Under the pieces are notes generated by a model. The model was not told the DNA's origin. It ran no database searches and was given only the letters and a program-made list of their open reading frames with translations. From Podarcis bocagei (lineage: Eukaryota), in assembly GCA_964188305.1 (NCBI GenBank), contig OZ076892.1: a DNA stretch of 64,000 nucleotides; one strand, given 5' to 3'. Positions 6,873 through 60,977 of this stretch are shown piece after piece. The first letter of the stretch is position 1. The number at the start of each line of letters is the position of its first letter. The translations under genes and the position numbers were made by a program.

Positions 6873-8444
6873 CCTATCCCTATGTTCAGAAAGTTGCAAC
6901 TCATCAGTCATACTGAAAATACTCTGCCCGTGCTCAGAAGCCCTGCTATTTGCATTCCTCTATCTGGCACATTCCAGAGCTGAGTCCCAGTCCTGAAACA
7001 AGATCCTGGTGGTTCTAAATGCTCAAATCCGGCTAAAACCTTTTCTATTCTCACTCCCCCCCCAACCTCTCATTTCTCAAGTGAGAATGATGACATTTCT
7101 GTTTCTTTCTCTACATCTACCCCCTTTTTTTCTTCCCTGATTTTTCTTCCTCTTCTCTTTAAAAGGGAAGAGCTGGCCTCTTCCTGCCTCTTCTCTTCCC
7201 CCATTCCCCTTCTCATTTCTATATGATTTGACTCTTATATATTTTATAGTACCCGAGGCAGTCACTTTGCAGGCCTCCTGCTGAGTAAATCGCCCTTCAC
7301 AGAGAAAGATCTTCCTGTCAATGACAGACGAGAGGTGCCAGCAGCGGCTGAGGAGGCTTAAAAAACCCATGAGTTGGCAAATCAGCAGGTATCTGTGTGC
7401 TGTTCTGGGTCCGCCCCTAGAATTAGTTCCTATCTTGTATCAAAGGAGCTTTCCTTCTTTTTTTTAAAAAAAAGTACAAGTACAAAAAGGAATGGTGGGG
7501 CCTAGAGGCTGTGTTTCAGGTTAAAAGACAAGAGCGTGGTATTTGCCTTCCTTTAAGAATTCACTTTTTTATTATTAAAAAAGGAAAATAAAAAAATACT
7601 AACACCAGCAGTTTGCTCTTTTACTTGTTTTGTTTTTCTTGTTCACTTAAAAAAAATCCTGAGAGATTGCCGAGGCAACAGGTTTGCTGAAGCTTCACTC
7701 ATGCTAGGCCATGTCCGCATGAAACATCTAAAACAGTATCACACTGCTTTAAACGGCCACGGCTTCCCCCAAAGATGCAAAATGGAACCTTCCAGACCCC
7801 TCTGATTGGCCCTTGGGATGCTGCCCTCTCCTTAAACCACACTTCAAATTCTTTTGTCCGTTCTCGAATTATGATAATGCCTCTTGCTTGCCTGGAGAGC
7901 AGATTTGTGTATTATGGCAAGCATGGAAACATCTGGCTGAATGTAGCTTTCCATACAAAGGTAAGAGTTGCTTTTTTGCTCCACCTACTTTGGCCACTGG
8001 CTCCACCCACCAGTGTCATGTGGCCCCCAGAAGGGAATGTATGGCCCTCAGGTCCTAGAATATTCCACACACCCTGCCTATGTGCAGTGGAAAGAAGATT
8101 GTCACTGTTTGCTTATAGAAGGTGTATGTATGGTGTTCAACACAGTAATACTGAGCCACAAGATACTTCCTTTCAGTCAACCCACAAACACCTGGGATTG
8201 GGCATTTCAGATGTGAAGGTTTGAGGATTGCAGCAACTCTAGGAAGAAGTGAGGCTGTGGGGTTGGCGAGGCAGAAGGCTGAAGAGGCAATGCTATTAAC
8301 CATTTGGACAGTGTATAGTTCTGGTTGCCTCGCTTCAAAAAGGATATGGCAGAGCTGGAAAAGTGTAGACTGATAAGATTCAGTCTGCAGGAGGCTCTCA
8401 CCTGCAGAGCACAGTGTTCAGCTGGGAATATAAGGAGTGAGATT

Positions 8445-9147: not shown

Positions 9148-9952
9148 ATGGCTTCACTTGTGCCTCTACCGCCGTTTGCGCCAGCCTCTGAATCATGGGA
9201 CTCCTACCTCGCTCGGTTCGACTGCTACCTCCAAGCCAACGAGCTGACGCAAGTATCACAGGAGCGTAAGCGGGGCCTATTCCTTAGCCTCTGTGGGCCT
9301 GAGGTGTTTGAGACGGCCCGAGCATTGGTTGCGCCTGAAGCAGTCCAGGCAACACCGTGGGACACGATCCAAGAGAAGCTCCGCAACCACTATGCACCAA
9401 AGCCGTCCAAGATTGCTGCCTGCCATGCGTTCTACCACCGGAACCAGGCAGAGGGGGAGTCAATCAACAACTACACCACCGCCGTGCGACAGGCTGCAAT
9501 GCACTGCTAGTTCCAAGACTTAGACGATGCCCTGATGGATCGAATCATCTGCGGGGTCCGGGACATCCATCTGCAATGGCGTCTCCTCGCCAAGCCAGAC
9601 CTCACGCTACAGAAAGCCATTGAGGAGGCTGTGGCCTCAGAAGCTGCTGAACGCTCCGCCCAGGAGATCCGCAAGTCCAGCAGCCCGCGTCTTGCTAGGA
9701 AGCCAGTTCCAGTGCATCATGAAGAGGCCAGCAGTGATGAGGCATCCTCCAGTGAAGACGATGACATGCACCAGACAAAGCGGGAGTGCAGGAAGTGCCA
9801 ACAGAAGTCCAAGGGCCAACCGGAATGTGCCGGCTGCGGAGGCAACCATTCCCGTGCCAAGTGTCGATTCAGAGACGCCATCTGTAGGAAGTGTTCCAGA
9901 AGGGGCCACATTGCTAAGGTCTGCCGATTGGCTCCGCCTGACACCCCCCCCC
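9148..9952 (+). pseudogene. Gypsy gag, disrupted
   Basis: MASLVPLPPFAPASESWDSYLARF... with an in-frame TAG at 9508-9510. The same frame continues to knuckles CAGCGGNHSRAKC and CRKCSRRGHIAKVC; the frame changes at the C9 run 9944-9952. Confidence 0.88.
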
Positions 9953-9959
9953 TTCACCG

Positions 9960-12356
9960 ACTTGCAAGTCCAAGTCTTCACTCCAGTCTGCCAAGGAAAA
10001 CTGTTTTGCTCTCATCAACTGCTGCTGCCTGTCTGGAACCACGATTGGCCAAACCGACTTGCCTACGCGACGCAAGCTGAACGTCACGGTGCTCATTGAA
10101 GGAGCTCCATGTGACATGGAGATTGACACCGGGTCTGCCCTGTCCATCGTGTCTTGGAGCACCATCAAAAGACTGGTACCCAGAGTGTCCAAAAGGCAAC
10201 TCGACTCTCACCGTGTACACCTGAGAGACTACCAGGGAAATGACACCCCCGTGGTATGCATTGGCCAGTTCCGGATCGCCTTCAAGGATTTTTCGGGCCT
10301 GCTCCGGTTGGTGGTGGTCGAAGGTCAGCGGCCAAGCCTCCTAGGGCTAGACTGGTTTGATGCCCTCGGCCTGGAAGTCACCGGCATCAACTGCATCTCT
10401 AACGCAGAGACTGAGGGTCTGGTCAAAGACTTTGCCGAGATTTTTGATGGCACTTTGGGGCAATATAAAGGTACGCCCATCTCCTTTAGCCTTGATCCAC
10501 AAGTCGCCCCCATCAAGCTAAAGCCACGCCGGGTTCCCTTTGTTCTCAAGGCTAAGGTGGATGAACAACTGGACAAGGTGATTGCCCAAGGAGTTTTGGA
10601 GCCGGTTGACCACGCCAAGTGGGAAACCCCCATCGTCACGCCTGTCAAGCCAGACGGGTCGGTGAGAATCTGCGCTGACTACAAGTGCACGATCAACAAG
10701 GCACTTCAGCAGCACGCTTATCCGGTTCCTGTTGTCCAACACCTGCTGCATTCCCTGGGTGAGGATAAGGTATTCGCTAAGCTGGACCTTGCCCAAGCCT
10801 ATCAACAACTGCCCGTCGATGGTGCCACTGCTGAAGCCCAGATGATCGTCACCCACAGAGGGGCATTCCGTTGCCGCCGGTTGCAGTTCGGGGTGAGTGT
10901 GGCTCCTGGCATCTTCCAAAGCCTTATGGAGCGTCTCCTGCAAGGGCTTCCGGGTGTGGTACCATATTTTGATGACGTCTTGGTGTCCACAGACTCAAAC
11001 CAGCAGCTGTTCGAGCGCCTCCGTGCCGTGCTGACCAGGTTCCAAGAGGCCGGGCTCAAGGTAAAGTGGGAGAAGTGCCAGATCACCGTTCCACAGGTAG
11101 AGTTCCTGGGCTATCTTATCGACGCCTCCAGCCTACACCCGACCACATCCAAGATCCGCGCTATCCAGCAGGCCCCCATCCCAAAGAACAAGACGGAGTT
11201 GCAGGCGTTCCTGGGGCTGCTGAACTTTTATAACATGTTCCTGCCCCACAAAGCCACGGTGGCTGAGTCTCTTCACCGACTCCTCAGCACAAAGACGCCT
11301 TGGTCCTGGGGTCATCGGGAGACAGCGGCCTTCAACACGGTCAAGGCTCTCCTTTCATCAGACAGTGTGCTGGTACAGTACAGTGAAGCCAGGCCGTTGG
11401 TCCTTGCCTGTGACGCCTCACCTTTTGGCATCGGCGCTGTCCTTAGTCACCGTTTTCCAGACGGAAGAGAAGCACCGCTCGCCTACTTTTCCAGGACACT
11501 ATCTCCAACGGAACGGAATTACAGCCAGCTTGACAAGGAGGCACTGGCACTTGTGGCTGGAGTGAAGAGGTTCCATGAATACCTCTATGGCAGGACTTTT
11601 GACCTCATCACTGACCACAAGCCGTTCCTGGGCCTCCTCGCCGGTGATCGTCCAACTCCACCGGTCCTCTCACCGCGCATGCTGCGATGGACTGTTTTCC
11701 TGGCTGCCTACCACTACCGGCTTGTCCATCACCCGGGGAAATCGATGGGCCATGCCGACGCCCTCAGCCGTTGCCCCCTTCCAGCGTTTGTGGAAGACCC
11801 GGCTCCAGCTTCATCGCTCCTCCTGATTGAGGATCTTCCGGCAGCGCCTGTATCGGCTGCCACTGTGGCCTCCGCATCTGCCCAGGATCGCACCATCAGC
11901 CATGTGCTCAACTGGGTGTGGAGGGGGTGGCCACAAGGGCCTTTTGCATCGGAGTTCCAGCCATTTGCAACCAGACAACATGAACTCTTGGCTCATCGCG
12001 GCTGTCTGCTGTGGGGAGACCGCACCATGATTCCCCAAAGACTCCGTCAACACGTCCTGGAGGCTCTGCACGTTGGCCACCCGGGAATTGTCAAAATGAA
12101 GGCGTTGGCTCGGTGTTACGTCTGGTGGCCTAACATGGACGATGCCATCACTGCCTGGGTGTCCGCCTGTCAAGCGTGCCAAGAATCGAGGTCTGCACCA
12201 CCGGCAGCTAAGGGACACACCTGGGAGACGCCAAAGACACCTTGGTTGAGGGTGCACATCGATCTGGCTGGCCCCTTTCACGGCCGGACCTTTTGGAGAA
12301 ATCGCTGTGTAGTCTGCCATGTCTACCCACTATTCAACACCAGCCAAAGCTGGTAA
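9960..12356 (+). CDS. Gypsy pol: protease, reverse transcriptase, RNase H, truncated integrase
   Basis: Motifs IDTGSA (protease); KLDLAQAY and YFDD (RT); CDAS, DKEAL, TDHKP, HADALS (RNase H); LHVGHPG...CQAC (integrase Zn finger). Breaks after RVHIDLAGPFHGRT into LTR sequence. The frame is open from just after TGA 9939-9941; no start codon of its own is implied. Confidence 0.9.
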   Translation, partial: TCKSKSSLQSAKENCFALINCCCLSGTTIGQTDLPTRRKLNVTVLIEGAPCDMEIDTGSALSIVSWSTIKRLVPRVSKRQLDSHRVHLRDYQGNDTPVVCIGQFRIAFKDFSGLLRLVVVEGQRPSLLGLDWFDALGLEVTGINCISNAETEGLVKDFAEIFDGTLGQYKGTPISFSLDPQVAPIKLKPRRVPFVLKAKVDEQLDKVIAQGVLEPVDHAKWETPIVTPVKPDGSVRICADYKCTINKALQQHAYPVPVVQHLLHSLGEDKVFAKLDLAQAYQQLPVDGATAEAQMIVTHRGAFRCRRLQFGVSVAPGIFQSLMERLLQGLPGVVPYFDDVLVSTDSNQQLFERLRAVLTRFQEAGLKVKWEKCQITVPQVEFLGYLIDASSLHPTTSKIRAIQQAPIPKNKTELQAFLGLLNFYNMFLPHKATVAESLHRLLSTKTPWSWGHRETAAFNTVKALLSSDSVLVQYSEARPLVLACDASPFGIGAVLSHRFPDGREAPLAYFSRTLSPTERNYSQLDKEALALVAGVKRFHEYLYGRTFDLITDHKPFLGLLAGDRPTPPVLSPRMLRWTVFLAAYHYRLVHHPGKSMGHADALSRCPLPAFVEDPAPASSLLLIEDLPAAPVSAATVASASAQDRTISHVLNWVWRGWPQGPFASEFQPFATRQHELLAHRGCLLWGDRTMIPQRLRQHVLEALHVGHPGIVKMKALARCYVWWPNMDDAITAWVSACQACQESRSAPPAAKGHTWETPKTPWLRVHIDLAGPFHGRTFWRNRCVVCHVYPLFNTSQSW

Positions 12357-24630: not shown

Positions 24631-25312
24631 CAGGGGTGCCAACTCCCAGGGACTGAGCCCTTTTGCCCCCCAATATTCTTTGGGAGGGGCTAGGGCCCCC
24701 CAAACGCGGGTGGCGCTGTGGGTAAAAGCCTCAGCACCTAGGGCTTGCCGATCGAAAGGTCGGCGGTTCGAATCCCTGCGGCAGGGTGCGCTCCCGTTGC
24801 TCGGTCCCAGCGCCTGCCAACCTAGCAGTTTGAAAGCACCCCCGGGTGCAAGTAGATAAATAGGGACCGCTTACTGGTGGGAAGGTAAACGGCGTTTCCG
24901 TGTGCTGCGCTGGCTCGCCAGATGCGGCTTCGTCACGCTGGCCACGTGACCCGGAAGTGTCTGCGGACAGCGCTGGCCCCCGGCCTCTTGAGTGAGATGG
25001 GCGCACAACCCTAGAGTCTGTCAAGACTGGCCCGTACGGGCAGGGGTACCTTTACCTTTCTAGGGCCCCCCAATGTTCAAAGGAGGTTGAGGAGGCCGAG
25101 GGCAGCTTCAGTAGCCAGTTCCTTCTCTTCCTTTTCCTGCCATGTAGAGGAAAGAGCAGGGAAGCAGCCCCCTGCCAGAAGCTAGAGGAGGATGAGCTGC
25201 CAGCCATTGAAGCCATGCTGCTGCTACATTTAGCTCCACCCCTGGCTCCTCCCAACATCCTGACATCGTGTGTGCGATGTCATCCCTTTTCCCTCAGAAG
25301 TTGGCACCTCTG
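24631..25312. mobile_element. hAT MITE carrying a nested Sauria SINE
   Basis: TIR CAGGGGTGCCAACT / AGTTGGCACCTCTG; 8-bp TSD CCCCTGAG at 24623-24630 and 25313-25320. Confidence 0.9.
24704..25059 (+). mobile_element. Sauria SINE nested in a hAT MITE
   Basis: tRNA-like head (GGTGGCGCTGTGG...GGTTCGAATCCC), tail ACCTTTACCTTT, 14-bp TSD CTAGGGCCCCCCAA at 24690-24703 and 25060-25073. Confidence 0.92.
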
Positions 25313-36607: not shown

Positions 36608-38777
36608 GCATGTGCATGCCTTCCCCATTCACTTCAGTGGAGCGGCTTGCAGGATGTGCAGCAATGGACTTAAATGCAAGAAAGCTTCTTGGAGAAGCTT
36701 TTGTGGGTGGGGGAGCTCTATGTGTGGTTTGGCTGTCTCCCATCCTCCTCAGCCAACCTCCAAATTGAGGGATAGAAGTGCCTTGCATTATTTACATTAT
36801 AAAAGTTCTATATCAAACTTTTTGATACATGGTGAAAGCCTTTCAAATACTATTTGAAATGTGTTGATTCTATGGAGGGAGGGAGGAATTCTCTTTGAAA
36901 CCTGGACAGTGTCCCTTCTGAATTGGAGGAGTATAAAGCCATCCAAGCTTGTGCCACGAGTTATAAACACTGCTGGATGGAGTGCTGTAATTGATTTTTG
37001 TTCTGTGTTTATAAAGCTGGCCAGACTTAGGTTGCAAAGATCAAAGCAGTTGGCTCACAAAGGCCTGCTTCTTCCCCTCCTCCCAGCTCCTTCATCTCTC
37101 CACTCAACTGCAATGAGTCTAGCAATACATCTGCTTCCCAGTTGCTGTCCAGCTTCCAGTGGACTCTGGCTTCCCAGATGCAATTCCACTTTTTGTTTTT
37201 CTTATTTTTCAAAGGAGAATCAGAAGGAGGTGGTGGGGTCTGTCCCCAGCCACCCCTGCTGCAATTCGCCTGAGGATATAGAACATCTGGGGCACCATCC
37301 AGCAAAAGCTAATTGCAATTTAAGTCCTCTTGGAATGAGTGGGACTTAAGTAGTCACAAAGCTGATGCCTTGTGCACACCTGGAACAGATGAGTCATGTA
37401 GCAGTGGAATGGCCTCTATCAGTTTGAAAAGCAAAGGTGTTGGTCCAAAATACTAGATGGATGGAAGGATAGATGGATGGATTGCAGTGTGATGACAATT
37501 TCAGAATTGCAGGGTTCTTTCATGATAGTTACAGCCACACATCCTTCTAAGATTATTCAACTTTCTAAGATTATACAATAAATTTATAATCCTACAATAA
37601 TAAGTAGGGATGCATTGCAACAATCAATGCCGATCTACTATTTTCTGCGCACGTACATGGGCAAATGGTTGGGAGTACTCCAACAACAACAAAATTGTGT
37701 TTACCAGGAAGCTCCATTGTATGCAACAGAACTTGCACACCATTCTCTTGACCCTGAAGCTCCTTGTGTTTGCAGTGTTGCTAAATGCTTAGCTTTGGAG
37801 CATACAGAATAACAACTCCTCAGGGTTCTTCCCATGTACCCTTGACAGAGTGACCCTAGGAGCCAAACCAGTGACTGACTCACCTCCTTTCACTCTGCTT
37901 GGCTCCAATCAGTGCAGAGAAGACTTCTCAGTGGCTAAAAAGCTCTCCGTTCATGCTGACTGGGCAGCTCTGGGGCACTGGAGACAGGGACCCCACTGCA
38001 GAAATAGTAACAGGTCTTCCACCACCCTGGACCACTACACCTCTGTCTTAGCATTTCATAGTTCACCATAGGTCCTGCGAGCAAGACCAGGTTTTGCTTT
38101 TCTGCCCTCTGAAAGTCTCCCTAAATTTGTGCCTATATAAAAAAAAATAGCCTATGCAAATGTGTCTCACGGGTCTGATATATACAGGACAAAGTCCACA
38201 CAGGATGTCCTTATCTTGGCAAAGTTCTTCATACACTTACATGTGCTTACCATGCACAATGGCCCAGTCACATGTAGTCCCACCACTTCAGCTGTGGACC
38301 CACCTGGGCCATCAGTCACTGGCATGCCAACATTAACATGTGAACTGGCACGTGAAGAAAGCAGACGCATGGAAGGGCTTTCACACCAGGCCTTCTTCAG
38401 CACCACTCAGGTGGCATTGACAGGTGGCAGTTGCCAATGTGTGGCATCCCAAGGTGTGCTACATGCCTCTGGCAGCCCCTCAGATAAACTACTCCGCTCA
38501 TTATTTTGATCAAAGCAATGTCTGTGGAACTGAGGAAATCAAATAAACAGAAGGGCCTGCTATTTCCAGTCTGTATGAGCTGCCATTTGGGAATCTAATT
38601 AGCCGGCATGATTCTCCGCTTCTCTCTCTCTCTCTTTAGCCTGATGACATCGTCATTTCAGCAAGAAGAATGCTTTAGTGCTCTGCTTCATACATTGGTT
38701 TCACATCCCATCTCCACGATCCAGCCGAGATGAAAAGGGCCTGTCATCAGTTACTGGTGTGGATAGATGCACATAGA

Positions 38778-38922
38778 GGCTGTGTACATACTATACATTG
38801 AAGGCACAATGGAACTATAGTTTACCTCTCGCAGAACTGCAATTTCCAGCACCCTTAATCTACAGTTCCTGGGATAATTTGGGGGAAGCCATGTGCTGTA
38901 AATGTATGGCATCCATGCAGCC
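38778..38922. mobile_element. MITE (possibly PIF/Harbinger type); related pieces at about 18270-18425, 24480-24625 and 43700-43930
   Basis: Ends GGCTG.../...CAGCC; shared core ctacagttcc...gggggaagccatg...aaatgtat recurs through the window. Confidence 0.5.
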
Positions 38923-39070
38923 ACAGACATGATGTGTAAATTGCCTTGAGGCCTGTCAGGCGAAAAGGTGGGGCATAAATAAATGAATTACTACTACTAC
39001 TATATAACACTTTCCCAGTGGAGCACCCTGATTCATCTTGGGTGCATTCAGATATGGGAATTATTGCATA

Positions 39071-39484
39071 ATGTCACAGAAAGTTAATGCATTGTTGTGG
39101 AGTTGTCAATGGCTAACAAGAGAAAATTTCTGTGAATGAAGTAAGAGGTGATTTTCTCTGAGCAGGGAAAAAGCACCTCATTATTTCTGTTCTTAACACA
39201 TTTGTCTCCATCTTCTTGCTTCATCCTTGATTCTTGGACATCACCAGCTTGCTTCACACCATCTATGAAGTAGTTGATGCTTCAGTAAACCACTCTCCCA
39301 GCTGCAGTAAAACCTTGCGGGTGAAGCTCACCATAGCTCCAGATGGGACTCAGAAGAAGAAGAGTATCCTACTGAACCATTCTGGTAGGAGTTTGATTCT
39401 GAATTTCCAATGACAGATTTGTCAACTCTATGAAACTGACTTAGTTTCATAGTCTTATCAATCCACCTAACCCAGTTTTGCCAT
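39071..39484 (+). pseudogene. Inverted duplicated fragment of NKD1 (exon 7 copy at 39237-39384 plus both intron flanks)
   Basis: 39237-39384 translates DITSLLHTIYEVVDASVNHSPSCSKTLRVKLTIAPDGTQKKKSILLNHS and differs at 6 of 148 nt from the reverse complement of 58752-58899. Flanks align to about 58640-59040. The acceptor AG is changed to TG. Confidence 0.93.
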
Positions 39485-41121
39485 AATGGCAAGGACTCAT
39501 CTACAGCCTTTCTGGATTCAAGGCAGATTCTCTTCCACTGAGTTGTAGTACCTTCCTTCCCACTAGAAAACAAATCATTGGAAGCCTGCAGGGCTTCATT
39601 CAGATGTGGGGTTTGTTGCGTTACATTTTCCTGATTATAATCCCAGCACTTCTGTCTCAACTTCTAAGGTTCCTTTTTCACTGCATCACCTGTTGCATTA
39701 TGGAACTGCGGTTTGATGGATATATCAACATGTCATGCTAAATTTTAAATTATGGGATTTTTCTCATACATTACGATGCAACACTCCCACAATCTTCCAG
39801 GTTTTTTTGGGGGGAAATAAGGTGGAAATGATCGCTAAAGTTTCAAAAAGATCCTGTAAAATGTTGAAATCGTCAGGAAAGGAAATGTTGGTGAGATGGA
39901 ATAAAGCCCTACCTAAATACAGTCCTTGACATTCTCCCCTTTCCATAGCGACCAGATGCTTAGCACCTGGAAAAAGTCCTGGGTTTGCTCCTGGACAGTT
40001 CCATTTGGAAAGCATCTAAGGTAGCAGGCCTGTGAAAGTCACACAGAGATCTCACCTAGTCACTGCTAGTCAGAACTAACAAGAAAGCCCCAGGGAAGAC
40101 TATCCAAAGCAGTCAAAGTCCCAAACAAGGGACAAGAAGTCATGCCGTGTGGCTCTCTGATGCTTAAAAATTGCCCCTGTTTCTTCAAGTCCGGTCTTTC
40201 TGCCCCACTGCCAGTAATGAATAATTGAAATTTTTGCTGTCCTTGAACATGGTATTTCATTGCCAAATGTAATGGCTATTAGCTTTGGATAATGGGGCCT
40301 GCAACAAAACATTTTTAGTGTGGGTTGTGTTCTCTGTTCACAATTCCAGGCACTCCATTTCCACTCCTCACAACAGTCAGCATTCCATCGCCACTGAGCA
40401 AGTTCAGCTCTCACTGAACTGTGTCAGGGAGTTGCCTCTTTTAGGATTTTTATTGCAAACCTGCAAATAGCTCCCTCTTGTGTGGGTGGTGCTGTTTTGG
40501 TGGCACTTTGCCCCCAAAGATTGGGGAATGGTTTGTTTTGGAGAGGTACATCCACTTATCTTTAAAACAAAAATCACTGATGAGGCACTCACACCTGAGG
40601 TTTCATAGCATCTTGTGCCAGTGAGTTCCATAGGTTAATTGTTCCTGTTCAGCATCCAGATGGAGCAGACAGGTGATAATAGCAATGGCAATATACTGTG
40701 ATCCTGCGGCTTGTTATGGAGATGAAATTGGCAGTTGACTGAAGCAGATAAGATCGTTCCATACTCCGTGCTGCTTTCCACTTGTGGTTTCTTAACATTC
40801 CCCTGACATGACAGACTTTGATAGCATTAACAGCTAGGCTATGTCTCTTAATTTATGCTACATTATTATTGCTTCGCTGATATTGGAAGACAAATGTTCA
40901 ACTTACAGAAGCCTCTCTCTTTCAAGCCAAAGACCATGCCCACAAAGGGTGGGGGTGGAGAGAGAGGGGGGGAAACAGCCTCCAATATATTTTCCGTCAA
41001 TGCCCTTTAAAAAAATATTAAAAAATCAATTTTTGTCGAGTTTTTACACTGCACATAAAAGACTGTGGCATCAATTAGCCTTAATTCTTTCCTCTCTCTC
41101 TCTCTTTTCTTTTTTTGGAAA

Positions 41122-41301
41122 NNNNNNNNNNNNNNNNNNNNNNNNNNNNNNNNNNNNNNNNNNNNNNNNNNNNNNNNNNNNNNNNNNNNNNNNNNNNNNN
41201 NNNNNNNNNNNNNNNNNNNNNNNNNNNNNNNNNNNNNNNNNNNNNNNNNNNNNNNNNNNNNNNNNNNNNNNNNNNNNNNNNNNNNNNNNNNNNNNNNNNN
41301 N
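41122..41301. other. Assembly gap (180 N)
   Basis: Run of n. Confidence 1.
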
Positions 41302-42481: not shown

Positions 42482-45400
42482 CCCTGTGCTTATATCCCAC
42501 CCTTCCTTCTGTAGGAATCTCAGGGCAGCTAACATATGTAAGATAAAATAATCATAAAAACAACAATTAAAAAGCACACCAATATATACAGTATAAGGAT
42601 CAAAATATAATGCAGTGTTTTCACAGATATTTTTTTAATGTAATTCTCGGTTTAGAGCAGTTCAGTCGGGATTCTGCTGTATGTGCAGATTGGCCCTCAT
42701 GCTGGATGTTTTTAGACTGATGGTTTCCCAAGGAAAAAAAAAGACGGAAGCAAGAGCCCATATAGATGGCCCAAAATGGGGACGTTCCACTGGTTGGTTG
42801 TCTGTATCCTCCTTGCAGGAGGCAGGGAGGGAGCAGGTGTTTGGTGAAACGTGTGGTAGAATGACCAATAATATCTAATCCATACATTAAATACTCCAGG
42901 GTTTTATCAGGGCCTTCTAACAACTCTGCAACATTTCTACCAACCGTCAAGGTTGTATCCAGGGAAAGGCAGGACCACTCAAAAGAATGAAACCCAGCAG
43001 CAAGCCCAGCCAAGTTATTTTTCAACCCAGGAGTGTTTCCAGCCAACTTGACAGTCAATTTCGATCACTGGCCAGAATTTCCTTGCCAACAGTCACCATT
43101 GCATTGTAGATACTGCACACAGTCATTTGAAGAAACTAATTAACATTCACTCTAATTTGGAAACTATTGCTTCAGGGTCTGAGACAAAGAAACAAGGAAA
43201 AACAGAGCCAAATGCTCGTCGTGCCCTCAGGGCAGCAATACAGAAACTGAATTAGTAATGGAGGTGGTGTTTTCATGGAGACCAAAACACTTGCTTTTTA
43301 GAAAACAGAGATCTAAAATGTTAAGTTCGGCCCAGGGGCCTGGAATTGGGGAGTGGGGGAAGTCCTCCCTTGGTTGCTCTTGATAAACATGGCCTGTCTT
43401 AGAATATTTCTAACCATCATGCCAAAAGGCCGAACTTTAGGTCGATCAAAAGTTTGTCCCCGTCTGGGGAAATCTGTTATCAAATCAAGATTCCATCTAC
43501 TCAAGAGGCAGGTTGCTTCTCAAGGTGTTCTTGACTAGGCCTCAGGCTTTTTTGAAAACTGAAATCAGGTTTTGCATTGCTCCCACCATTTTATGGGCTG
43601 ACAAGTCCAAGCCTGGTTTAAAGGTAAACAGCACCAAAACACTATGATTATCACTTTGAACAGTCGCACAAAGCCCCCACAAAGAAAGTTGGGAAGTGTA
43701 GCTTGCTAAGGGTGCTGAAAGTTGCTTAGGAAACCCTATTCCCCTCACAGATTTCCCTGAGAAGAAAAATTGATAGTTAAACCACCCTGGGAACTTTAGT
43801 TCTGTGAAGGGAATAAGTATCCTCTAACAACTCTCGGCAACTTTAAGAAACTACATTCCACATGATTATTTAGGGAAAGTCTGTTTAAGTGGTTATGTTA
43901 CTGCTTTAAATGTATAGCATGGATGGTTCCCATGAAAGGAAAGCACATGTTGCCTATTATTAGCACCTGGCTAAGTGGGCAAAGTATCCCCCACTGTAGT
44001 GAGATGCGGTCTATTTCTAATTAAAGTAAAGCAACTTTCTAAATTTGCACCTGTATATCTATAGTAGCACTTGTAAATTTTATACAGACCTGAACAGCCT
44101 TTTGTCTCTACCCCCACCCCCCACCCCACAATGCATTTTGGATTTTTTGGCAACCCCTACATTCCCAACAAATCTCCAATAATAATGCAACAACCACAAT
44201 ATAAGAAGAGTTTGCCGCAGCATTAGTGAAGGTCCTCAATCATGTGACCAAAACAATTCTTCTACTTTTTTTTTTAATAAAAAAAGTCTAGAATACAAAT
44301 GAATGAAAATGAAATGAGAACTGGAGGAATGATGACGCTGAACTTAACAAAATAAAGGGGAGAAAACGTCTGAACTAGTAAAATTTTTAATTAACAGGGG
44401 TTTCTCTTGGCACAGTTTTGCTATTAAATAAATAAAGCATTTAGTCAAAACCATCTATATTAACTATACAAAATACTGAAAAGCAAACTTTTTTTCCTTT
44501 TTCCTTTTTTACAAAAATGTTATGGAGGCTTAAGAGTTCTGTGAATAAAAAATAACCCAAAACATAAACTGTGCTACATGACATGTTCAGTTATTCACAA
44601 TTAATGCACATTAATACAAATGCAAGACAGTATTTAAATACTGTATGTTTCTACATAACTGATATAAGTTTGTTTTTGTTTGTTTGTTTGTTTGTTTAAA
44701 AAAGCACATTGATGCCATGTTACTAAAGTTCATTTGCATTTCACAAAATCTCAGCATGATATAGTTTGCATTTTGGAAAGTGAACAAAACATCTCAACCA
44801 GCCAACCCCCACATAAGACACCCTGTTTAATTTCCTTCAGTATTCACCTTAAATTCTTTGAAAGATTAGCTCCACAGAGATCAAGAACAAAACACCCATT
44901 GATTGGAAAAAAAGGTGAACCTTCTCCCCCTTCCTTCGTTCCTGGGAGCCATTTTGCTGCCATCTTTTCTGACAGAAAAACTTACAGTGCCATTGGAAGC
45001 TTGCAGGTTCAATGTCCTGACTCAGTTGATTCAAAAGAAGGAAAGCTTAGTTCCCAGTTGGGTGGTAAAACCTGTGTCTGAACCAGTGGTGTCATGAGGA
45101 TTGGTATTTGGGGCCCCCACTCTGCATGGCCCTCAAATGCAGCAGGGTTGGTTTAAGTAAATGATGCAATACACAGTTTCATCCCCACTCCCCTGGTCAG
45201 ATCATTATATCCAGTCTTAAAATTACCTAATTACAATTGCTGGTCTGGGATGTACCACTTCAATCCACAGGTGGAGGCTCACATACAAAAAAGTCCCTTT
45301 AGACACATGAACATATTAGCAGGTCAGGGAGACCCCTGACTGTGGGAAAAGTCACCCGAAATGGTCAGGGGGGTGGAGCAATTGCCCAACAGTGGAAAAG

Positions 45401-47848: not shown

Positions 47849-48214
47849 TAAAGGTAAAGGTAAAGGTACCCCTGACCGTTAGGTCCAGTTGCTGACGACT
47901 CTGGGGTTGTGCGCTAATCTAGCTCTATAGGCCAAGGAAGCTGGTGTTTGTCCACAGACAGCTTCCGGGCCATGTGGCCAGCATGACTAAGCCACTTCTG
48001 GCGAAACAGACCAACGCACAAAATGCCGTTTACCTTCCCGCCAGATTGGTACCTATTTATCTACTTGCACTTTGACGTGCTTTCGAACTGCTAGGTGGAC
48101 AGGAGCTGGGACCGAACAACGGGAGCTCACCCTGTTGCGGGGATTCGACCCGCCAACCTTCTGATCGGCAAGCTCTAGGCTCTGTGGTTTAACCCACAGC
48201 GCCACCCATGTCCC
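47849..48214 (-). mobile_element. Sauria SINE
   Basis: (TAAAGG)n tail at left and reverse-complement tRNA head (ggattcgacccgcc...cacagcgccaccc) at right; flanked by CTTAAAG; homologous to 24704-25059. Confidence 0.9.
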
Positions 48215-52506: not shown

Positions 52507-53081
52507 TCATGTCTGGTAGAAGTGGTGATAGTGGTGGTGGTGCTCGTGGTGGTGGTGGTGCTCGTGTCTCTGAATCATCTGCCCCACTTGGCCTTCGTAC
52601 AAGATGACAGCGGGCAGGTCTCTCACGTGCTCTTTTTCGAAAACCGTCCCGGGGGGCTGGAAGGTTTTGCAGACTTGGTGAGTCTCTTTGGCCCTCTGCT
52701 TGTGTTTCTTGTAAGCCGGCTGAGGCTGCATGGGGAGATAAGGAAGGCTTGGGCCCAGCCGTGTGGTGGGGGAAGCCATCGGCACGGAGGCCCCTTGGGC
52801 AGGCTTACTCCTTACGGCCCTCCCCGCGTTGGCGGAAGAGGCATTTCTGCCCTGAGCTTTGGGAGACTTGGCAAAATGCCTGCTCGCATCTTGGCTCCGC
52901 AGCCTCTGCTGTATCTCTGCAAGCTTTGCATAGGAGGCTTCCATCAAACTGACGTGGCCGGGGTCCGCTGCTGGTGATCTGCGCTGGTGGGCGTGGAAGA
53001 TTTCTGGCTCATGGGAACGGGACCTTGTTTGGTTTGCGACTCGGATGGGAGGGTCGTGTTTCTGAGCCGCTGGTGGTGATC
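52507..53081 (-). CDS. NKD1: NKD1 terminal coding exon (exon 10 by analogy to human), ending in the C-terminal histidine cluster
   Basis: Minus-strand translation (G)SPPAAQKHDPPIRVANQTRSRSHEPE...YEGQVGQMIQRHEHHHHHEHHHHYHHFYQT*, the characteristic NKD1 C-terminus. Acceptor tctacttcttgtttctcAG at 53083-53082; phase 1 joins the previous exon; TGA at 52509-52507. Confidence 0.97.
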
Positions 53082-53196
53082 CTGAGAAACAAGAAGTAGA
53101 GCACTTGGTCATTTTAAGGCTCTAAGTACTGATATGACAACAAAAGCAGGAAGCAGCTGAAGTAAAATAAACCAATGTACCAAACAGAGGATGAGC

Positions 53197-53637: not shown

Positions 53638-53702
53638 AACATATAGATCATTACAATAGCTTCTCTAGAGAGCAGCTAAATTATAGAAAATGCATAATAT
53701 AC

Positions 53703-53833
53703 CTGGCCCAAATTTTGACGTATAGTTTTCTATTCCTGCAAGATCCAAATAGTGGTTTCTCCTTTCAATGTTTTCATCGACACAATGACGATAGCATCCA
53801 TTCTGTTCAGTTTTGGCTTCACCATGGTGGTAC
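53703..53833 (-). CDS. NKD1: NKD1 internal coding exon (exon 9 by analogy), 131 bp
   Basis: Encodes (R)YHHGEAKTEQNGCYRHCVDENIERRNHYLDLAGIENYTSKFGP(G), containing the conserved Naked motif HCVDENIERRNHYLDLAGIENY. Acceptor ccttctcacAG, donor GTatat; phases 2/1 fit both neighbours. Confidence 0.96.
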
Positions 53834-54694
53834 CTGTGAGAAGGAAGGGAAATTGCAATGCACATATTATTATATCCAGATCAGTGAGCACACACTGAAA
53901 TGATAAGCTTTGTTTTGAAGTTACAGACAGTCAGTGCTTCTGAGAGCAATGCTCCTACAAAATTCACCCTTGCTGGAATTCCTTGCAATGCCATATTCAA
54001 TAGTAGCACACATGTAATGTTGCTGGGGCCCCAGCACCCACAGGAAGCTGGGAACAGACCTCGGAGGGTGGGCAGACAGAGCTAGGCAGACCAATGCTTC
54101 AAAACAATTTTAAGTATTTTACTATTTTTAACGAGTTTGCTTTTATTACTTTGTATTTTACAATGGTGTTTTAAAATGTTGTAAGATCCCTTCAATCCCA
54201 GCTTGGGAAAAAGGCAGGATATAAATACTTAAAATAATAATAGTTGGCCATGGGGTACCCCTCGCCATCCTAATGTATTTGGCAAAGGGGAGACTGCAGG
54301 TAAAAACTCCAGGAGATAAAGAACACACTCCTGATTGGAGGGGGAAATAGTTTTAATAAAGCCGGATCAACTGTTGGCTGAATAAGTCCATTTCTCTTTC
54401 CTGTTCAAGCAGTACCATTTCATATATAGCAGAGTTATTTCCTGAGAATGAATTTCTGAAATACCAGTCATTTATGAGCCAAACAAGGAAAGGAAAAATG
54501 GGAAGAATCTTAGCTTTAACAACGATGAGGCCAAGAATGTGGCACAATAAAATGCACCAAGTCCCAACAGAACGACGTCTACATATGTAAACAATTTATT
54601 TAAAAGAACAAAAACAGACAAGTCTTTTTTTTAAAAAAAAGACACAAACCTGACCCTTTCAAGGAGATTTGTGTAACTGCTAAAATGCAACAGA

Positions 54695-55328
54695 ACAACC
54701 TCAGATATGCAGATGACACAACTTTGATGGCAGAAAGTGAGGAGGAATTAAAAGAACCTCTTAATGAGGGTGAAAGAGGAGAGTGCAAAATATGGTCTGA
54801 AGCTCAACATCAAAAAAACTAAGATCATGGCCATTGGTCCCATCACCTCCTGGCAAATAGAAGCAGAAGAAATGGAGGCAGTGAGAGGTTTTACTTTCTT
54901 GGGCTCCATGATCACTGCAGATGGTGACAGCAGCCACGAAATTAAAAGACGCCTGCTTCCTGGGAGAAAAGTGATGACAAACCTAGACAGCATCTTAAAA
55001 AGCAGAGACATCACCTTGCCAACAAAGGTCCATATAGTTAAATCTATGGTTTTCCCAGTACTGATGTATGGAAGTGAGAGTTGGACCATAAAGAAGGCTG
55101 GTTGCTGAAGAATTGATGCTTTTGAATTATGGTGCTGGAGGTGACTCTTGAGAGTCCCATGGACTGCAAGAAGATCAAACAGAGGACAAGATGGTTGGAC
55201 AGTGTTCTTGAAGCTACTAACGTGAGTTTGACCAAGCTGCGGGAGGCAGTGGAAGACAGGAGTGCCTGGCGTGCTCTGGTCCATGGGGTCACAAAGAGTC
55301 TGACATGACTAACGGACTAAACAACAAC
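54695..55328 (+). mobile_element. BovB (RTE clade) LINE, 5'-truncated, in an NKD1 intron, antisense to the gene
   Basis: Closely similar to 2760-3532; (CAA)n tail; 13-bp TSD AAAATGCAACAGA at 54682-54694 and 55329-55341; internal deletion of about 157 bp near 55180. Confidence 0.95.
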
Positions 55329-55405
55329 AAAATGCAACAGAGATGACTTTCTTTGCACATACCCCTCTCAATAGCAAATTGGTAGCCACTGAATTTATTA
55401 CTGTA

Positions 55406-57625: not shown

Positions 57626-57701
57626 ATGCTGTTAAGCCTGTAATGCTTGGAAGTCTGTAACTACAAGGGCGCAGTCAATCAGATGGGGCCTTCTCACCAG
57701 A
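57626..57701 (+). repeat. 76-bp direct repeat, copy 1 (identical to 59296-59371)
   Basis: Base-by-base identity of atgctgttaagcctg...ttctcaccaga. Confidence 0.95.
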
Positions 57702-58134
57702 TTATCTCCTGGCTGGGCGATGAACGAATCAGGTGGCAAGGCCGCGTTTGATAGGCTCCACCCATGTTGCCCCAAGATTCGATGCATCATTATGGCAACA
57801 TAGGAGCAAGCTGACACAGCAGCATTTGATGTAAGCCCAACTTCTTTAGCAAAGAATTTTCTTTAGCAAAGAATTATATACGGCTTAATGAACAAAAACT
57901 TTTAAATGGTTTCAAAAAGAAGTAAATAAAATAAAACATGCATATGAAGATCAAAACAACAAGGAGACATAGCATTTAGAAAAAAACCAGTAGAACTTTA
58001 AAAATAAAATATGCATAATAAAATGACAGGCATGAGTAGGCTTGCCTAAAAAACAAATTTTAAATCCTAAGCCTCTCAGGGCTGACCTTAAAGATCCCTA
58101 ATCATGAGACAAATGAAGAATTGCTCCAGCTCAC

Positions 58135-58219
58135 CTGAGGGAGCCCCTCTGCTTCTTCTCACAACTCCTCAGCTCTTCATTGGCCTTGCTTTCCGTTCGG
58201 TGCCTCGAGCTCTGAAGAT
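58135..58219 (-). CDS. NKD1: NKD1 internal coding exon (exon 8 by analogy), 85 bp
   Basis: Encodes (D)LQSSRHRTESKANEELRSCEKKQRGSL(R), similar to the human DLQSARPRAETKPTEDLRSWEKKQRAPLR segment as recalled. AG acceptor at 58221-58220, donor GTgagc; phases 1/2 fit. Absent from the ORF track; found by hand. Confidence 0.92.
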
Positions 58220-58751
58220 CTGCCCCCACGACACACACACACAAAACCATGTTCATTTTCCTATTGTTATAATTTTAACCATTTCCCCCATTGTTTTCAG
58301 AATGAACATACAACAAACATCTTCCCTCACCAAGAGTGCTATATCTTGCCATTTCCCTCTTATTATTGACATTCTTACACGGCTTAACAAGTGGGGGCCA
58401 TCTACCATTTAAATGAACTGAGCAGGGGAACATCATCTCCTCCATGACCACACCTGGAGGGAGTGGAAGATCCAGCATCCACAGAAGCATTCTTTAGTTT
58501 TGTGTTATGTGGAGGGGAAGAAATGTTTGGGGGTAAAAGGACAAAAGTGATTTAAAGGAGATTGGGGATCACGATCCCAAAAAGATTCTCCAGTTAAAAG
58601 GTTCAGGCAGTAGGTGATATGAAAAACTGCCCATCAGAGATGGCAAAACTGGTTTAGATGGACAGACAACCAACCTGGTAAGTCAGTTTTATATGCTTCT
58701 GCATAATGAGTCGACAAATCCGCCATCAGAAATTCAGAATCAAACTCTTAC

Positions 58752-58899
58752 CAGCATGGTTCAGTAGGATACTTTTCTTCTTCTGACTCCCATCTGGAGC
58801 TACGGTGAGCTTCACCCGCAAGGTTTTACTGGAGCTGGGAGAGTGGTTTACTGAAGCATCAACTACTTCATAGATGGTATGAAGCAAGCTGGTGATGTC
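58752..58899 (-). CDS. NKD1: NKD1 internal coding exon (exon 7 by analogy), 148 bp; C-terminal part of the EFX Dishevelled-binding region
   Basis: Encodes DITSLLHTIYEVVDASVNHSPSSSKTLRVKLTVAPDGSQKKKSILLNHA. Acceptor tttgattccAG, donor GTaaga; phases 0/1. I did not find the next upstream exon (EWTFTLYDFD) before 64000. Confidence 0.96.
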
Positions 58900-59295
58900 C
58901 TGGAATCAAAGATGAAACAAGCAGAGGGAGACAAATGCGTTAAGAACAGAAATAAAGAATGAGGTGCTTTTTCCCCGCTCAAAGAAAATCACTTGTTACT
59001 ATTGACAATTCCACAACAATGCGTTTACATTCTGTGACATCACAGCAGCTCAATCAATGCAGTGGTTACAGTTATTGAACTTCCATATTTTTCAATCACT
59101 CCCCTTCCCTTCTTAGTTTGTTGTCATGTCTGTTAAACCCCAAGCAAATATTTTAAAACCATCATGTACATAAAAGTGTGCTGGCAAGAAGGCAACATCC
59201 AGATGCAGGAAGTAAATAAATAATCACATGAGCTCAGAGAAATGGAAAAGGTATGTTACAACAAGATATCCTCTAAACTTTTGCCCAACTACCTA

Positions 59296-59392
59296 ATGCT
59301 GTTAAGCCTGTAATGCTTGGAAGTCTGTAACTACAAGGGCGCAGTCAATCAGATGGGGCCTTCTCACCAGAGAAGGCCCCATCTCACCAGAT
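59296..59392 (+). repeat. 76-bp direct repeat, copy 2, followed by a 14-bp inverted segment
   Basis: 59371-59384 is the reverse complement of 59351-59364. Confidence 0.95.
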
Positions 59393-60977
59393 CCTGCCAA
59401 CGACATTCAAGAAAGATCTAGCTGCCACTCAGAGATTCATCCCTTGATGAGGTGCCTGTATCAATCCATTGCAACCACCTTTTATTGGAGGTATTGTTAT
59501 AGAAGGGAATTCCTGAGTACTAAATGTTACATCTGAATGAGCTCCCCAAAATGTGTTTGTTTATTTTCCCAAGAGAATCTGACAAGCTTTAGGAAAGAAT
59601 AGTAAAATTATAGCTGTCCAGTGCTTTGCCTGTAGTAGTTTTAGGTACTTTTTTTTTGCATGACATGCCAGAAGGCATTGAACCACCGGAGCAAATGGCT
59701 TTAAAGGAGATAAGACCTTGAGCCTTCGAGCCCAGAAAGGCAGGTTAATTAAAAGCCAAAAAGGTTCAATCTCTACTGTGAGTTATAACTGAAGTTAACA
59801 GAATGACTCCATATATACGCTGATTCTAACTTAATATATAGTATGCCAGTGTCCATCTATCCCACAGAACTCTTCCTTCAGTCTCAGCTCTGAACTCACT
59901 GGGTGAGTTATGTCTCTGGTCACAAGCAGGTACATACACACAAGCAAGCAATATCATTCAAAATCTTCTGACAGCTTAGAGCCATCCTTTTGACAACATA
60001 GTGAAAATGCCAGCTAGCTGTTTGGTAGGAGACAGATGGCCATCTGAGCATTCTCACCTATCAGAAACTCCATTAACAAACCCAGCACCTCTAGAAACAA
60101 GGCTCCACAGATAAGAGGCAAACCCACTACACCGCTTACAAGGAATTTTGTTGAGAACACACGGGCAACACACCTCTCTTTGAAACCCCAATCTGTTTTC
60201 TAACACATCAGGTCAAAAAGTTCAGCACTTCACACATGACTAAGCTGAGAAGGTTTGGATGGTTGCAAATTACTTTGCTGCTCTTCAGCTATAGGTAGTC
60301 TCCACTGCCGGAAGGTCCAACTCAATCAACAGTTGTCCTGCATTCTGATTGTGTCATTGAGTTCTTGCCTAATCTTCTGTACCTCCAAGACACACATACA
60401 CTCATCATGTAATCTGCTACAAAGTTGAAGTTCTCTGTAGAATGGGGATACCTCAGTAGTACAGCAACTGCCTTGCATGCAGAAGGTCTCAGGTTCAATC
60501 TTAAGTAGCTCCTGGTAGGGCAGGCAATTCCCCCTGCCTGCAACCCCACTCCAAGTCAGTGTGGGCAATACTAGACTACATGGACCAACAGTCTGACTTG
60601 TTTCCAAACCACTGGCCCTGCTGGCTGGGACTGATGGGAACCGAGAGTCCAACAACTGGATAACTGGTTCCACATCCCTGAGCAACCCATTAGTAAACTG
60701 AAAGACCACTGAAAAGGGAGAAAAACTCCTCACTAGGCTGAAGATCTACATCAAGGATGGGTGGCTTATGGCCCTTCGGGTGTTGTTGGACTACAAACCC
60801 ATCATTCCTGACCATCAGCCATGCTGACTGGAGCTGATAGGCATTGGAGCCCAGCAACTGAAGGGCCACAGGTTCCCCATCCTTGACAAAGACTGAATGC
60901 GTGAATTTGGCTTTCACTGGCCAAATTATTATATAGCCATGGGTGGTGGGGTGGAATAGCATCACACTACTGCCCTG

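What the first reader, a model, noticed from the sequence alone, without database searches (positions are those of the whole stretch)
39071..39484. Inverted copy of NKD1 exon 7 with its intron flanks, 13 kb past the stop codon
Seen: 39237-39384 (+) matches the 148-bp exon at 58752-58899 (-) at 142/148 nt with no indels (2 synonymous changes; S>C, V>I, S>T, A>S). About 165 bp of upstream and 100 bp of downstream flank also align to the introns, less closely and with indels, so this is a DNA-level duplication rather than a retrocopy. The acceptor is dead (ttccAG to ttctTG) while the donor GT survives. Inference: the two copies form a ~400-bp inverted repeat ~19 kb apart. NKD1 transcription running past the poly(A) site would make RNA antisense to its own Dishevelled-binding exon and splice sites, which could drive exon skipping, ADAR editing or endo-siRNAs in a Wnt negative-feedback gene. 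The pair could also seed an inversion of the 3' end of NKD1. Caveats: the 4:2 nonsynonymous:synonymous pattern looks neutral, the likely poly(A) site near 44370 lies ~5 kb before the copy, and an assembly gap at 41.1 kb lies between the copies.
Basis: partly seen in the sequence, partly recalled or inferred. Interest (0 to 1): 0.8.

Follow-up and report, generated by a model that had tools for sequence, protein, structure and literature searches.

The report
Decaying inverted copy of NKD1 exon
A 414-base piece of the Wnt-feedback gene NKD1 (one coding exon with bits of both introns) was copied in reverse about 19 kb away, past the end of the gene, long ago; it looks like a dead, slowly decaying fragment, not a regulator.

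Summary
Window 39071-39484 (+) is an inverted DNA-level copy of 59040-58640 (-), which holds the 148-nt NKD1 exon at 58752-58899. The exon part matches 142/148 with no indel. The intron flanks match 87.5% with five indels. Bird and alligator NKD1 proteins confirm the gene, and only this exon has a second copy.

The copy looks dead:
- The acceptor AG is now TG.
- Three of its amino-acid changes hit residues that do not vary from fish to alligator, and pigeon polarises them to the copy.
- The lower exon divergence fits a neutral copy set against a constrained parent (expected 9.25 differences, seen 6, P=0.18).

The copy sits at the same locus in a relative about 1.8% diverged (organism E). It is absent from 50 kb downstream of pigeon NKD1. 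A fold-back palindrome at the right breakpoint and a non-random 28-nt flanking direct repeat suggest a templated insertion during repair or replication.

The regulatory reading has no support, but it was not properly tested. Three RNA runs gave zero reads over the copy, and they also lacked NKD1 exon 7 reads. The copy lies 4.9 kb past the likely poly(A) site. The inverted geometry depends on a scaffold join across 180 N. This is an ordinary partial pseudogene.

The parts
39071..39236 (+). Copy of the 3' end of the NKD1 intron upstream of the exon. It carries a 29-nt insertion at 39111-39139 and a 4-nt deletion. The acceptor AG is changed to TG at 39235-39236.
   Evidence: 137 aligned nt, 15 mismatches.
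39237..39384 (+). Copy of the 148-nt NKD1 coding exon ('exon 7'). The reading frame is open, with 6 differences from the parent.
   Evidence: 142/148. (89.8% to alligator NKD1, against 95.9% for the parent). (3 nonsynonymous changes derived in the copy).
39385..39484 (+). Copy of the 5' end of the downstream intron, with the donor GT kept. It contains a copy-specific 10+10-nt palindrome at 39428-39452.
   Evidence: (I3), 18 and 19: 95 aligned nt, 14 mismatches, 3 indels.
58640..59040 (-). Parent segment in NKD1: the exon at 58752-58899 with 141 nt of upstream intron and 112 nt of downstream intron.
39478..39492 (+). Palindrome TTGCCAT-A-ATGGCAA, centred exactly on the right breakpoint of the copy (39484/39485). 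Possible fold-back or template-switch scar.
   Evidence: Sequence. Such palindromes occur at a background of 4.7e-4 per position.
39040..39067 (+). Left member of a 28-nt direct repeat (22/28 matches) that flanks the inserted block. It ends 3 nt before the copy starts.
   Evidence: D1; 0 of 2000 shuffles and 3 of 1487 real control pairs reach 22/28.
39592..39619 (+). Right member of the 28-nt direct repeat, 107 nt past the end of the NKD1 homology. It lies at the edge of a multi-copy element.
   Evidence: Depth profile (bins 39501-39700).
39485..39591 (+). 107 nt between the NKD1 fragment and the right direct repeat, of unassigned origin. Positions 39505-39542 resemble 60489-60452 (-) in an upstream NKD1 intron at 76%.
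   Evidence: no homology to the adjacent parent intron. (score 20; 0 of 200 shuffles reach it).
41122..41301 (.). Run of 180 N between the copy and NKD1. The inverted geometry depends on this join.
44386..44391 (-). ATTAAA hexamer, the likely NKD1 poly(A) signal, 4.9 kb before the copy in the direction of transcription.
   Evidence: Not confirmed with RNA.
52507..53112 (-). ORF spanning the coding part of the NKD1 last exon (tblastn match 52510-53097), with the His-rich C-terminus and the stop codon at 52507-52509.
53701..53841 (-). NKD1 exon 9.
58134..58223 (-). NKD1 exon 8. It has no second copy in the window.

Best explanation
This is a non-functional partial duplicate of NKD1, an unprocessed pseudo-exon. 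A stretch of about 400 bp of genomic DNA, covering one coding exon and the adjoining ends of both introns, was copied in inverted orientation into intergenic DNA about 19 kb away, 13 kb past the NKD1 stop codon.

The event was small from the start, since both breakpoints are sharp and no neighbouring exon came along. It most likely arose by template switching during break repair or replication (a templated insertion). Since then the copy has drifted: it lost its splice acceptor, changed conserved residues, gained indels and a palindromic mutation cluster, and it still differs between close relatives.

Shown here: the copy, its limits, its decay pattern, its presence in a relative and its absence from pigeon. 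Inferred: the mechanism of origin, the age (tens of millions of years, from my own rough idea of squamate neutral rates), and the lack of function.
For: - Real and bounded: self-BLAST E=3e-114, with no homology beyond 39071 or 39484. Only exon 7 of the four NKD1 exons in the window has a second copy.
- Not an assembly ghost: a DNA run of organism E (about 1.8% diverged) yields one 1043-nt contig joining unique left flank to the copy (38319-39359, 98% identity). A separate contig from the parent locus carries the parent's TTCT indel.
- Decay: the acceptor AG is now TG. Alligator and a killifish have S, V and S where the copy has C, I and T. Pigeon polarises 3 nonsynonymous changes to the copy and the 2 synonymous ones to the parent. 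Alligator NKD1 is 95.9% identical to the parent exon and 89.8% to the copy.
- Neutrality not rejected: exon 4.1% against flanks 12.5% (Fisher p=0.006). With the parent exon frozen and the copy drifting at half the flank divergence, 9.25 differences are expected and 6 are seen, P(<=6)=0.18.
- Still changing: organism E's copy keeps the ancestral C at 39304 and G at 39164, and lacks 14 nt at 39440.
- Age and origin: flank distance is JC 0.137, about 7 times the divergence between organisms A and E. The copy is absent from the pigeon locus out to about 50 kb past the stop. The right breakpoint sits at the centre of a 7+7 palindrome. A 28-nt flanking direct repeat is non-random. No terminal inverted repeats, poly(A) tail or matches to other repeats in the window mark the block. 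No Rfam family matches.
- No RNA reads over 39001-39600 in three RNA runs.
Against: - The exon part of the copy carries somewhat fewer changes than expected: 3-4 on the copy's branch against 7.8-9.25 expected, P about 0.05-0.11. If some parent change is allowed, the total gives P=0.067. Mild constraint or a past gene-conversion episode therefore cannot be excluded.
- The reading frame is still open and the donor GT is intact.
- The RNA test has no positive control, because NKD1 exon 7 reads, which would have been laid at the 90% threshold, were also absent.
- A random 414-nt piece of this window would contain a whole exon only about 1% of the time (my estimate from the exon map). That is ordinary across a genome-wide scan but unexplained for this one event.
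Confidence: 0.8

Rival explanations
1. Cis-regulatory antisense arm. NKD1 transcription that fails to terminate reaches the copy, and the RNA pairs with the exon 7 region. The pairing would be within one molecule or with neighbouring nascent transcripts. The result would be exon skipping, ADAR editing or endo-siRNAs that tune this Wnt feedback gene.
For: The geometry is right as assembled. The - strand RNA over 39237-39384 would be antisense to the exon. The predicted core duplex is -283 kcal/mol against -60 for shuffles, and about -599 for the full arms. Pseudogene-derived endo-siRNAs are a known phenomenon (PMC3616710, abstract seen).
Against: - The copy is 4.9 kb past the likely poly(A) signal, with six more AATAAA/ATTAAA hexamers on the way.
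- No RNA read was seen on either strand in three runs (weak, because NKD1 itself was not seen).
- The arms decay at a rate compatible with neutrality, and the copy keeps diverging between close relatives.
- From general knowledge: exon 7 would normally be spliced minutes before polymerase reaches a site 19 kb downstream, and cleavage at the poly(A) site separates the two arms.
- Canonical RNAi from long dsRNA is constrained in mammals (PMC11239679, abstract seen); whether that holds in this animal is unknown.
Confidence: 0.04
2. The copy, or its exon core, is kept similar to the parent by something other than chance. This could be occasional gene conversion between the inverted arms, or nucleotide-level constraint because the fragment has been co-opted, for example as part of an unannotated + strand transcript that uses the surviving donor.
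For: The exon core is three times less diverged than the flanks (p=0.006). The copy's branch has only 3-4 exon changes against 8-9 expected. The frame is open and the donor GT is intact.
Against: - The contrast is explained by constraint on the parent alone (P=0.18).
- Divergence jumps to 11-13% right at the exon edges, which a conversion tract would not respect.
- All polarised changes on the copy's branch are nonsynonymous and fall at deeply conserved residues.
- The acceptor is lost, with no AG in the pyrimidine tract.
- No RNA was seen.
Confidence: 0.08
3. Assembly problem. The left contig (up to 41121) could be misplaced or flipped, so the true arrangement would not be an inverted repeat 19 kb apart. 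In the extreme case the copy itself would be a false duplication.
For: A run of 180 N lies between the arms.
Against: - A false duplication is excluded: flanks are 12.5% diverged, homology is only 414 nt, and independent contigs from another organism carry both loci in their own contexts.
- Misorientation of the whole left contig cannot be excluded, but there is no positive sign of it.
Confidence: 0.08
4. Alternative origin with the same present state: a reverse-transcribed fragment of unspliced NKD1 pre-mRNA inserted by LINE machinery, with the 28-nt direct repeat as a long target-site duplication.
For: The fragment is centred on an exon, and transcribed DNA is the substrate of such events. 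A flanking direct repeat is present. LINE reverse-transcriptase fragments are present in the window.
Against: No poly(A) or microsatellite tail is present at either end, and no LINE or SINE 3' end is joined to the fragment in a recognisable way. A 28-nt repeat is long for a target-site duplication. The palindrome at the right breakpoint points to DNA strand switching.
Confidence: 0.1

Closest known systems
Unprocessed (duplicated) partial pseudogenes and gene fragments
   Same: Genomic copy that includes intron sequence. Only one of ten exons is present. A splice site is lost, conserved residues are replaced, and no expression was seen.
   Different: Very small (414 nt), inverted, and placed just downstream of its own parent gene rather than in a larger segmental duplication.
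Templated insertions and fold-back or template-switch rearrangements at DNA breaks (MMBIR/FoSTeS-type events; PMC11724301 for the yeast fold-back class, abstract only)
   Same: Inverted copy of a nearby template. There is a palindrome exactly at one breakpoint, extra unassigned sequence next to it, and no transposon hallmarks.
   Different: Much longer than the 5-34-nt insertions in that yeast study. The 28-nt flanking direct repeat is not a standard feature. The event is old, so the junctions are eroded and microhomology cannot be read with confidence.
Gene-pseudogene inverted repeats that yield endo-siRNAs (mouse oocytes, from my own knowledge; PMC3616710 for a human case, abstract seen)
   Same: An arm antisense to a coding exon lies near the parent gene, and the predicted duplex is strong.
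   Different: No evidence that both arms are ever in RNA, no small-RNA data, and the arm lies outside the annotated transcription unit.
Inverted repeat pairs within one transcript that are edited by ADAR or steer splicing (inverted Alu pairs, long-range intronic pairing; from my own knowledge)
   Same: Long, nearly perfect complementarity that covers a splice acceptor, an exon and a donor.
   Different: Those pairs lie inside the same pre-mRNA, usually within a few kb. Here one arm lies 4.9 kb beyond the likely cleavage site.

Membership tests
Unprocessed partial pseudogene (duplicated gene fragment) | Homology to the parent includes intron sequence (not a spliced retrocopy) | tested here: met
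   137 + 95 aligned intron nt flank the exon copy.
Unprocessed partial pseudogene (duplicated gene fragment) | Incomplete gene: it cannot encode the parent protein | tested here: met
   Only exon 7 has a second copy in the window; there is no exon 8, 9 or 10 copy.
Unprocessed partial pseudogene (duplicated gene fragment) | Disabling changes or relaxed constraint | tested here: met
   Acceptor AG>TG. Three nonsynonymous changes at residues invariant in alligator and fish are polarised to the copy. The neutral expectation is not rejected, P=0.18.
Unprocessed partial pseudogene (duplicated gene fragment) | Not expressed as a functional product | tested here: inconclusive
   Zero RNA reads in three runs of a relative, but NKD1 itself was not detected there.
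Templated insertion / template-switch duplication | Inserted sequence copied from a nearby locus, often inverted | tested here: met
   The template is 19 kb away in opposite orientation.
Templated insertion / template-switch duplication | Junction signatures (microhomology, fold-back palindromes) | tested here: inconclusive
   A 7+7 palindrome is centred on the right breakpoint, against a background of 4.7e-4 per position. The left junction is ambiguous within 3 nt. The event is old and the junctions are eroded.
Transposon-captured gene fragment (Pack-type element, Helitron capture) | Terminal inverted repeats or other element ends bounding the fragment, a short family-typical target-site duplication, and multiple genomic copies | tested here: not met
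   No inverted repeats bound the block. The direct repeat is 28 nt. Depth over 39101-39400 in a whole-genome run is about that of copy plus parent only.
Hairpin or antisense endo-siRNA locus | Both arms present in RNA (one read-through transcript or convergent transcripts) | tested here: inconclusive
   No reads over the copy, but there was no NKD1 signal in the same runs.
Hairpin or antisense endo-siRNA locus | 21-23-nt small RNAs mapping to the arms | not testable with these tools
ADAR-edited inverted repeat pair | Both arms lie inside one transcription unit | tested here: not met
   The copy is 4.9 kb beyond the ATTAAA at 44391, and six further hexamers intervene. The poly(A) site itself was inferred from sequence only.
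NKD1 (naked cuticle homologue 1) as the parent gene | Sequence identity to named NKD1 proteins, a His-rich C-terminus, and exon order | tested here: met
   70% identity to bird NKD1 over the last exon. Four exons map colinearly to alligator, pigeon and echidna NKD1. The C-terminus is HEHHHHHEHHHHYHHFYQT. Pfam has no model for this family.

The most novel reading that the evidence does not exclude
In tissues with strong Wnt-driven NKD1 transcription, read-through transcripts reach the copy. The 148-bp, 96% matched duplex with exon 7 and its splice sites would then be edited or diced, adding an RNA-level brake to a Wnt negative-feedback gene in this lizard lineage.
Probability: 0.03. Interest if true: 0.6.

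Novelty: new member of a known kind. Interest (0 to 1): 0.15.

Why it matters
As read here, it matters little. It is one more small duplicated gene fragment, useful mainly in three ways:
- as a dated marker shared by this group of relatives;
- as a fairly clean natural example of a templated inverted insertion with a breakpoint palindrome;
- as a warning for annotation and read mapping, because exon 7 reads and the copy cross-map at 96%.

It would matter more if the arms were shown to meet in RNA. That would be a self-made antisense control of a Wnt feedback inhibitor, but nothing here points that way.

Tried and rejected
- **Pfam scan of four NKD1 exon peptides.** No family matched, so identity was taken from the word search and tblastn instead.
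- **Cross-species test in squamates.** The two word searches returned no squamate NKD1. Presence in distant lizards and snakes therefore could not be tested. The alligator locus was too long to fetch. Only pigeon was obtained, and it has a single exon 7.
- **Extension of homology beyond 39071 and 39484.** Not distinguishable from shuffles.
- **Transposon capture.** No terminal inverted repeats and single-copy depth.
- **Known RNA families in 36.5-41.1 kb.** None.
- **RNA test.** Zero reads, but the internal control (cross-laid exon 7 reads) was also zero, so I do not count it as evidence of silence in NKD1-expressing cells.
- **A contig of organism E joining 39066 to 39670.** I considered it as an empty-site allele and rejected it. 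Only 28 nt lie on one side, the offset does not fit the direct-repeat register, and the right side is a multi-copy element.
- **tRNA scan around the 76-nt repeat near the parent exon.** None found.
- **Steps deliberately left out.** I did not lay reads over, or try to read across, the N run at 41122-41301. Human NKD2 entries appeared in the hit list, and I did not fetch, align or search with them.

Full report
**1.

Reading both places and aligning them shows that 39237-39384 on the + strand is a reverse-oriented copy of 58752-58899 on the - strand. The match is 142 of 148 bases with no indel. Frame 0 is open in both copies.

A self-BLAST of the window gives 39140-39484 against 59000-58640 at 84.4% (E=3e-114). 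A further block, 39071-39110 against 59040-59001, is 90% identical. The two blocks are separated by a 29-nt insertion in the copy. Beyond 39071 and 39484 the similarity is no better than for shuffled sequence. The duplicated segment is therefore 414 nt with sharp ends.

The acceptor ttccAG has become ttctTG and the donor GT is kept. The N run is at 41122-41301.

**2. The parent is NKD1**

Pfam has no model that matches these exons. The 201-residue last-exon ORF (52507-53112, -) ends in the His-rich tail. It is 70% identical to proteins that NCBI and UniRef name NKD1 or naked cuticle homologue in birds.

tblastn with alligator, pigeon and echidna NKD1 (proteins returned) maps four colinear exons on the - strand: 58752-58899, 58134-58223, 53701-53841 and 52510-53097. 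It finds one extra hit only, the copy at 39237-39383.

The human gene has 10 exons, and its EFX motif binds Dishevelled (PMC2776356). That this exon is 'exon 7' and belongs to the EFX region rests on that numbering and on my own memory of the protein. Exons 1-6 lie outside the window.

**3. The copy is real DNA, not an assembly ghost**

Twenty runs from eight studies hold the stretch 36.5-41.1 kb. They carry five coded organism labels, with word shares from 0.87 down to 0.55. That corresponds to up to about 1.8% divergence.

In a DNA run of the most distant label (organism E), one 1043-nt contig runs from unique left flank into the copy (38319-39359, 19 differences). A second contig covers 39334-39534. 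A third, from a 1711-nt contig on the other strand, is the parent locus laid across; it carries the parent's TTCT indel at 39180 and the parent's letters at 39381 and 39388. Both loci therefore exist separately in a second organism.

The orientation of the copy relative to NKD1 still rests on the scaffold join across the 180 N. I did not try to read across it.

**4. How the copy has evolved**

Split by part:

| Part | Differences | Divergence | Indels |
|---|---|---|---|
| Exon | 6 of 148 | 4.1% | none |
| Flanks | 29 of 232 | 12.5% (JC 0.137) | five |

The contrast is significant (Fisher p=0.006). This is what is expected if the parent exon is frozen by selection while the copy drifts. Half the flank divergence predicts 9.25 differences, and 6 or fewer then has P=0.18. 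If the parent is allowed some change, P falls to 0.067. That is a mild deficit that I cannot call real.

Divergence rises to 11-13% immediately at both exon edges. This fits selection on the parent better than a gene-conversion tract.

Outgroups place the amino-acid changes on the copy. Alligator and a killifish have S, V and S where the copy has C, I and T. Alligator NKD1 is 95.9% identical to the parent exon and 89.8% to the copy. With the pigeon exon as outgroup, three nonsynonymous changes are derived in the copy, the two synonymous ones are derived in the parent, and one is ambiguous. Synonymous polarity at that distance is weak.

The copy is still changing. Organism E keeps the ancestral C at 39304, so S>C is recent in the window's lineage. 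E also keeps G at 39164 and lacks 14 nt at 39440.

Part of the downstream-flank divergence is a cluster that created a perfect 10+10-nt palindrome in the copy only (39428-39452). This looks like a template-switch mutation. Without it the flank divergence is nearer 10.6%, and the neutral expectation (7.8) is even closer to what is seen.

**5. Age and origin**

The flank distance is about seven times the divergence between organisms A and E, so the event long predates their split. With a neutral rate of roughly 1e-9 per site per year (my own rough figure), it is tens of millions of years old.

The pigeon NKD1 locus was fetched with about 50 kb past its stop codon. It has a single exon 7. Squamate NKD1 proteins did not come up in either word search, so more distant lizards and snakes could not be checked.

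No terminal inverted repeats, poly(A) tail or similarity to other repeats in the window bound the block. Depth in the whole-genome run over 39101-39400 is about that of copy plus parent. These results argue against capture by a multi-copy transposon.

Two junction features stand out:
- The NKD1 homology ends at 39484, exactly at the centre of the palindrome TTGCCAT-A-ATGGCAA (39478-39492). Such palindromes occur at 4.7e-4 per position in this window.
- A 28-nt direct repeat (22/28 matches) lies at 39040-39067 and 39592-39619. The left member ends 3 nt before the copy. No shuffle out of 2000, and only 3 of 1487 real control pairs, reach that score.

Between the NKD1 fragment and the right repeat lie 107 nt of unassigned sequence. 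A 38-nt part of it (39505-39542) resembles 60489-60452 (-) in an upstream NKD1 intron at 76% (0 of 200 shuffles reach the score). This may be a second template, or a shared old repeat; depth there is raised about fourfold. I could not decide between the two.

Taken together, these features fit a templated, strand-switching insertion during break repair or replication better than retrotransposition or transposon capture. This is an inference.

**6. The functional reading**

If NKD1 transcription ran on to the copy, the RNA would indeed be antisense to exon 7 and its splice sites. The core duplex is predicted at -283 kcal/mol, against -60 for shuffles. The supporting facts are thin:
- The copy begins 4.9 kb past the ATTAAA at 44391, and six more AATAAA/ATTAAA hexamers lie on the - strand in between.
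- In two bulk RNA runs and one single-cell RNA run of organism E, no read lay on 39001-39600 on either strand. About 1.7-1.9 billion letters were read from each run.
- The reads that did land in the 3-kb stretch were all partial, 90-95% matches to short high-copy cores (37.7-37.8, 38.88-38.91 and 40.6 kb), so they came from elsewhere.

The 90% threshold would also have laid reads from the true exon 7 onto the copy, and there were none. NKD1 was therefore not sampled in these runs, and read-through remains untested.

From general knowledge, exon 7 should be spliced well before the polymerase is 19 kb further on, and cleavage at the poly(A) site separates the arms.

An inversion by recombination between the arms is conceivable. 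However, the longest perfect identity is 46 nt, and the product would break NKD1.

**7. Verdict**

The best reading is an old, inert, partial pseudogene of one NKD1 exon made by a small inverted templated duplication. It is a new instance of a known kind and of low interest, unless RNA from NKD1-expressing tissue shows that the two arms meet.

No N was filled. Human NKD2 entries listed were not fetched or used.

Noticed in passing
window 57626-57701 and 59296-59371: A perfect 76-nt direct repeat brackets NKD1 exons 7 and 8, the two members being 1.67 kb apart. The upstream member runs into a 14-bp-stem palindrome at about 59358-59397. It could be two ends or fragments of one element, or a recent local duplication. 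ARAGORN finds no tRNA here.
   Followed up: partly
window 9148-12356 (+): Retrotransposon-like gag and pol ORFs: a zinc-knuckle gag and a 765-residue pol ORF with protease, RT, RNase H and the start of integrase. GC is high. Only described, nothing rebuilt.
   Followed up: no
window 2494-3534 (+) and 54694-55331: Two LINE reverse-transcriptase fragments, RTE/BovB-like by eye, about 90-91% alike. The second sits in the NKD1 intron between exons 8 and 9.
   Followed up: no
window 7249-7482 (+); pigeon locus L001: Residues 371-439 of the pigeon protein model named NKD1-like (P0012) are not NKD1. They match this window through stop codons at 42% identity. The match lies about 45 kb past the NKD1 stop, so a non-coding stretch conserved between bird and lizard was probably mis-annotated as coding in pigeon.
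   Followed up: partly
window 47856-48207 and 24708-25059: A second inverted pair in the window, 80% identical over about 355 nt. One arm is in the presumed NKD1 3' UTR. It is probably two copies of a repeat family.
   Followed up: no
window 38878-38910: A 32-nt core that is very high-copy in the genome run and attracts RNA reads whose both ends continue into unrelated sequence. It is a mapping trap right beside the finding.
   Followed up: partly
window 39428-39452: A perfect 10+10-nt palindrome present in the copy but not in the parent intron. It replaces a stretch of unrelated letters, so it looks like a template-switch mutation cluster. The relative, organism E, lacks 14 nt of it.
   Followed up: partly
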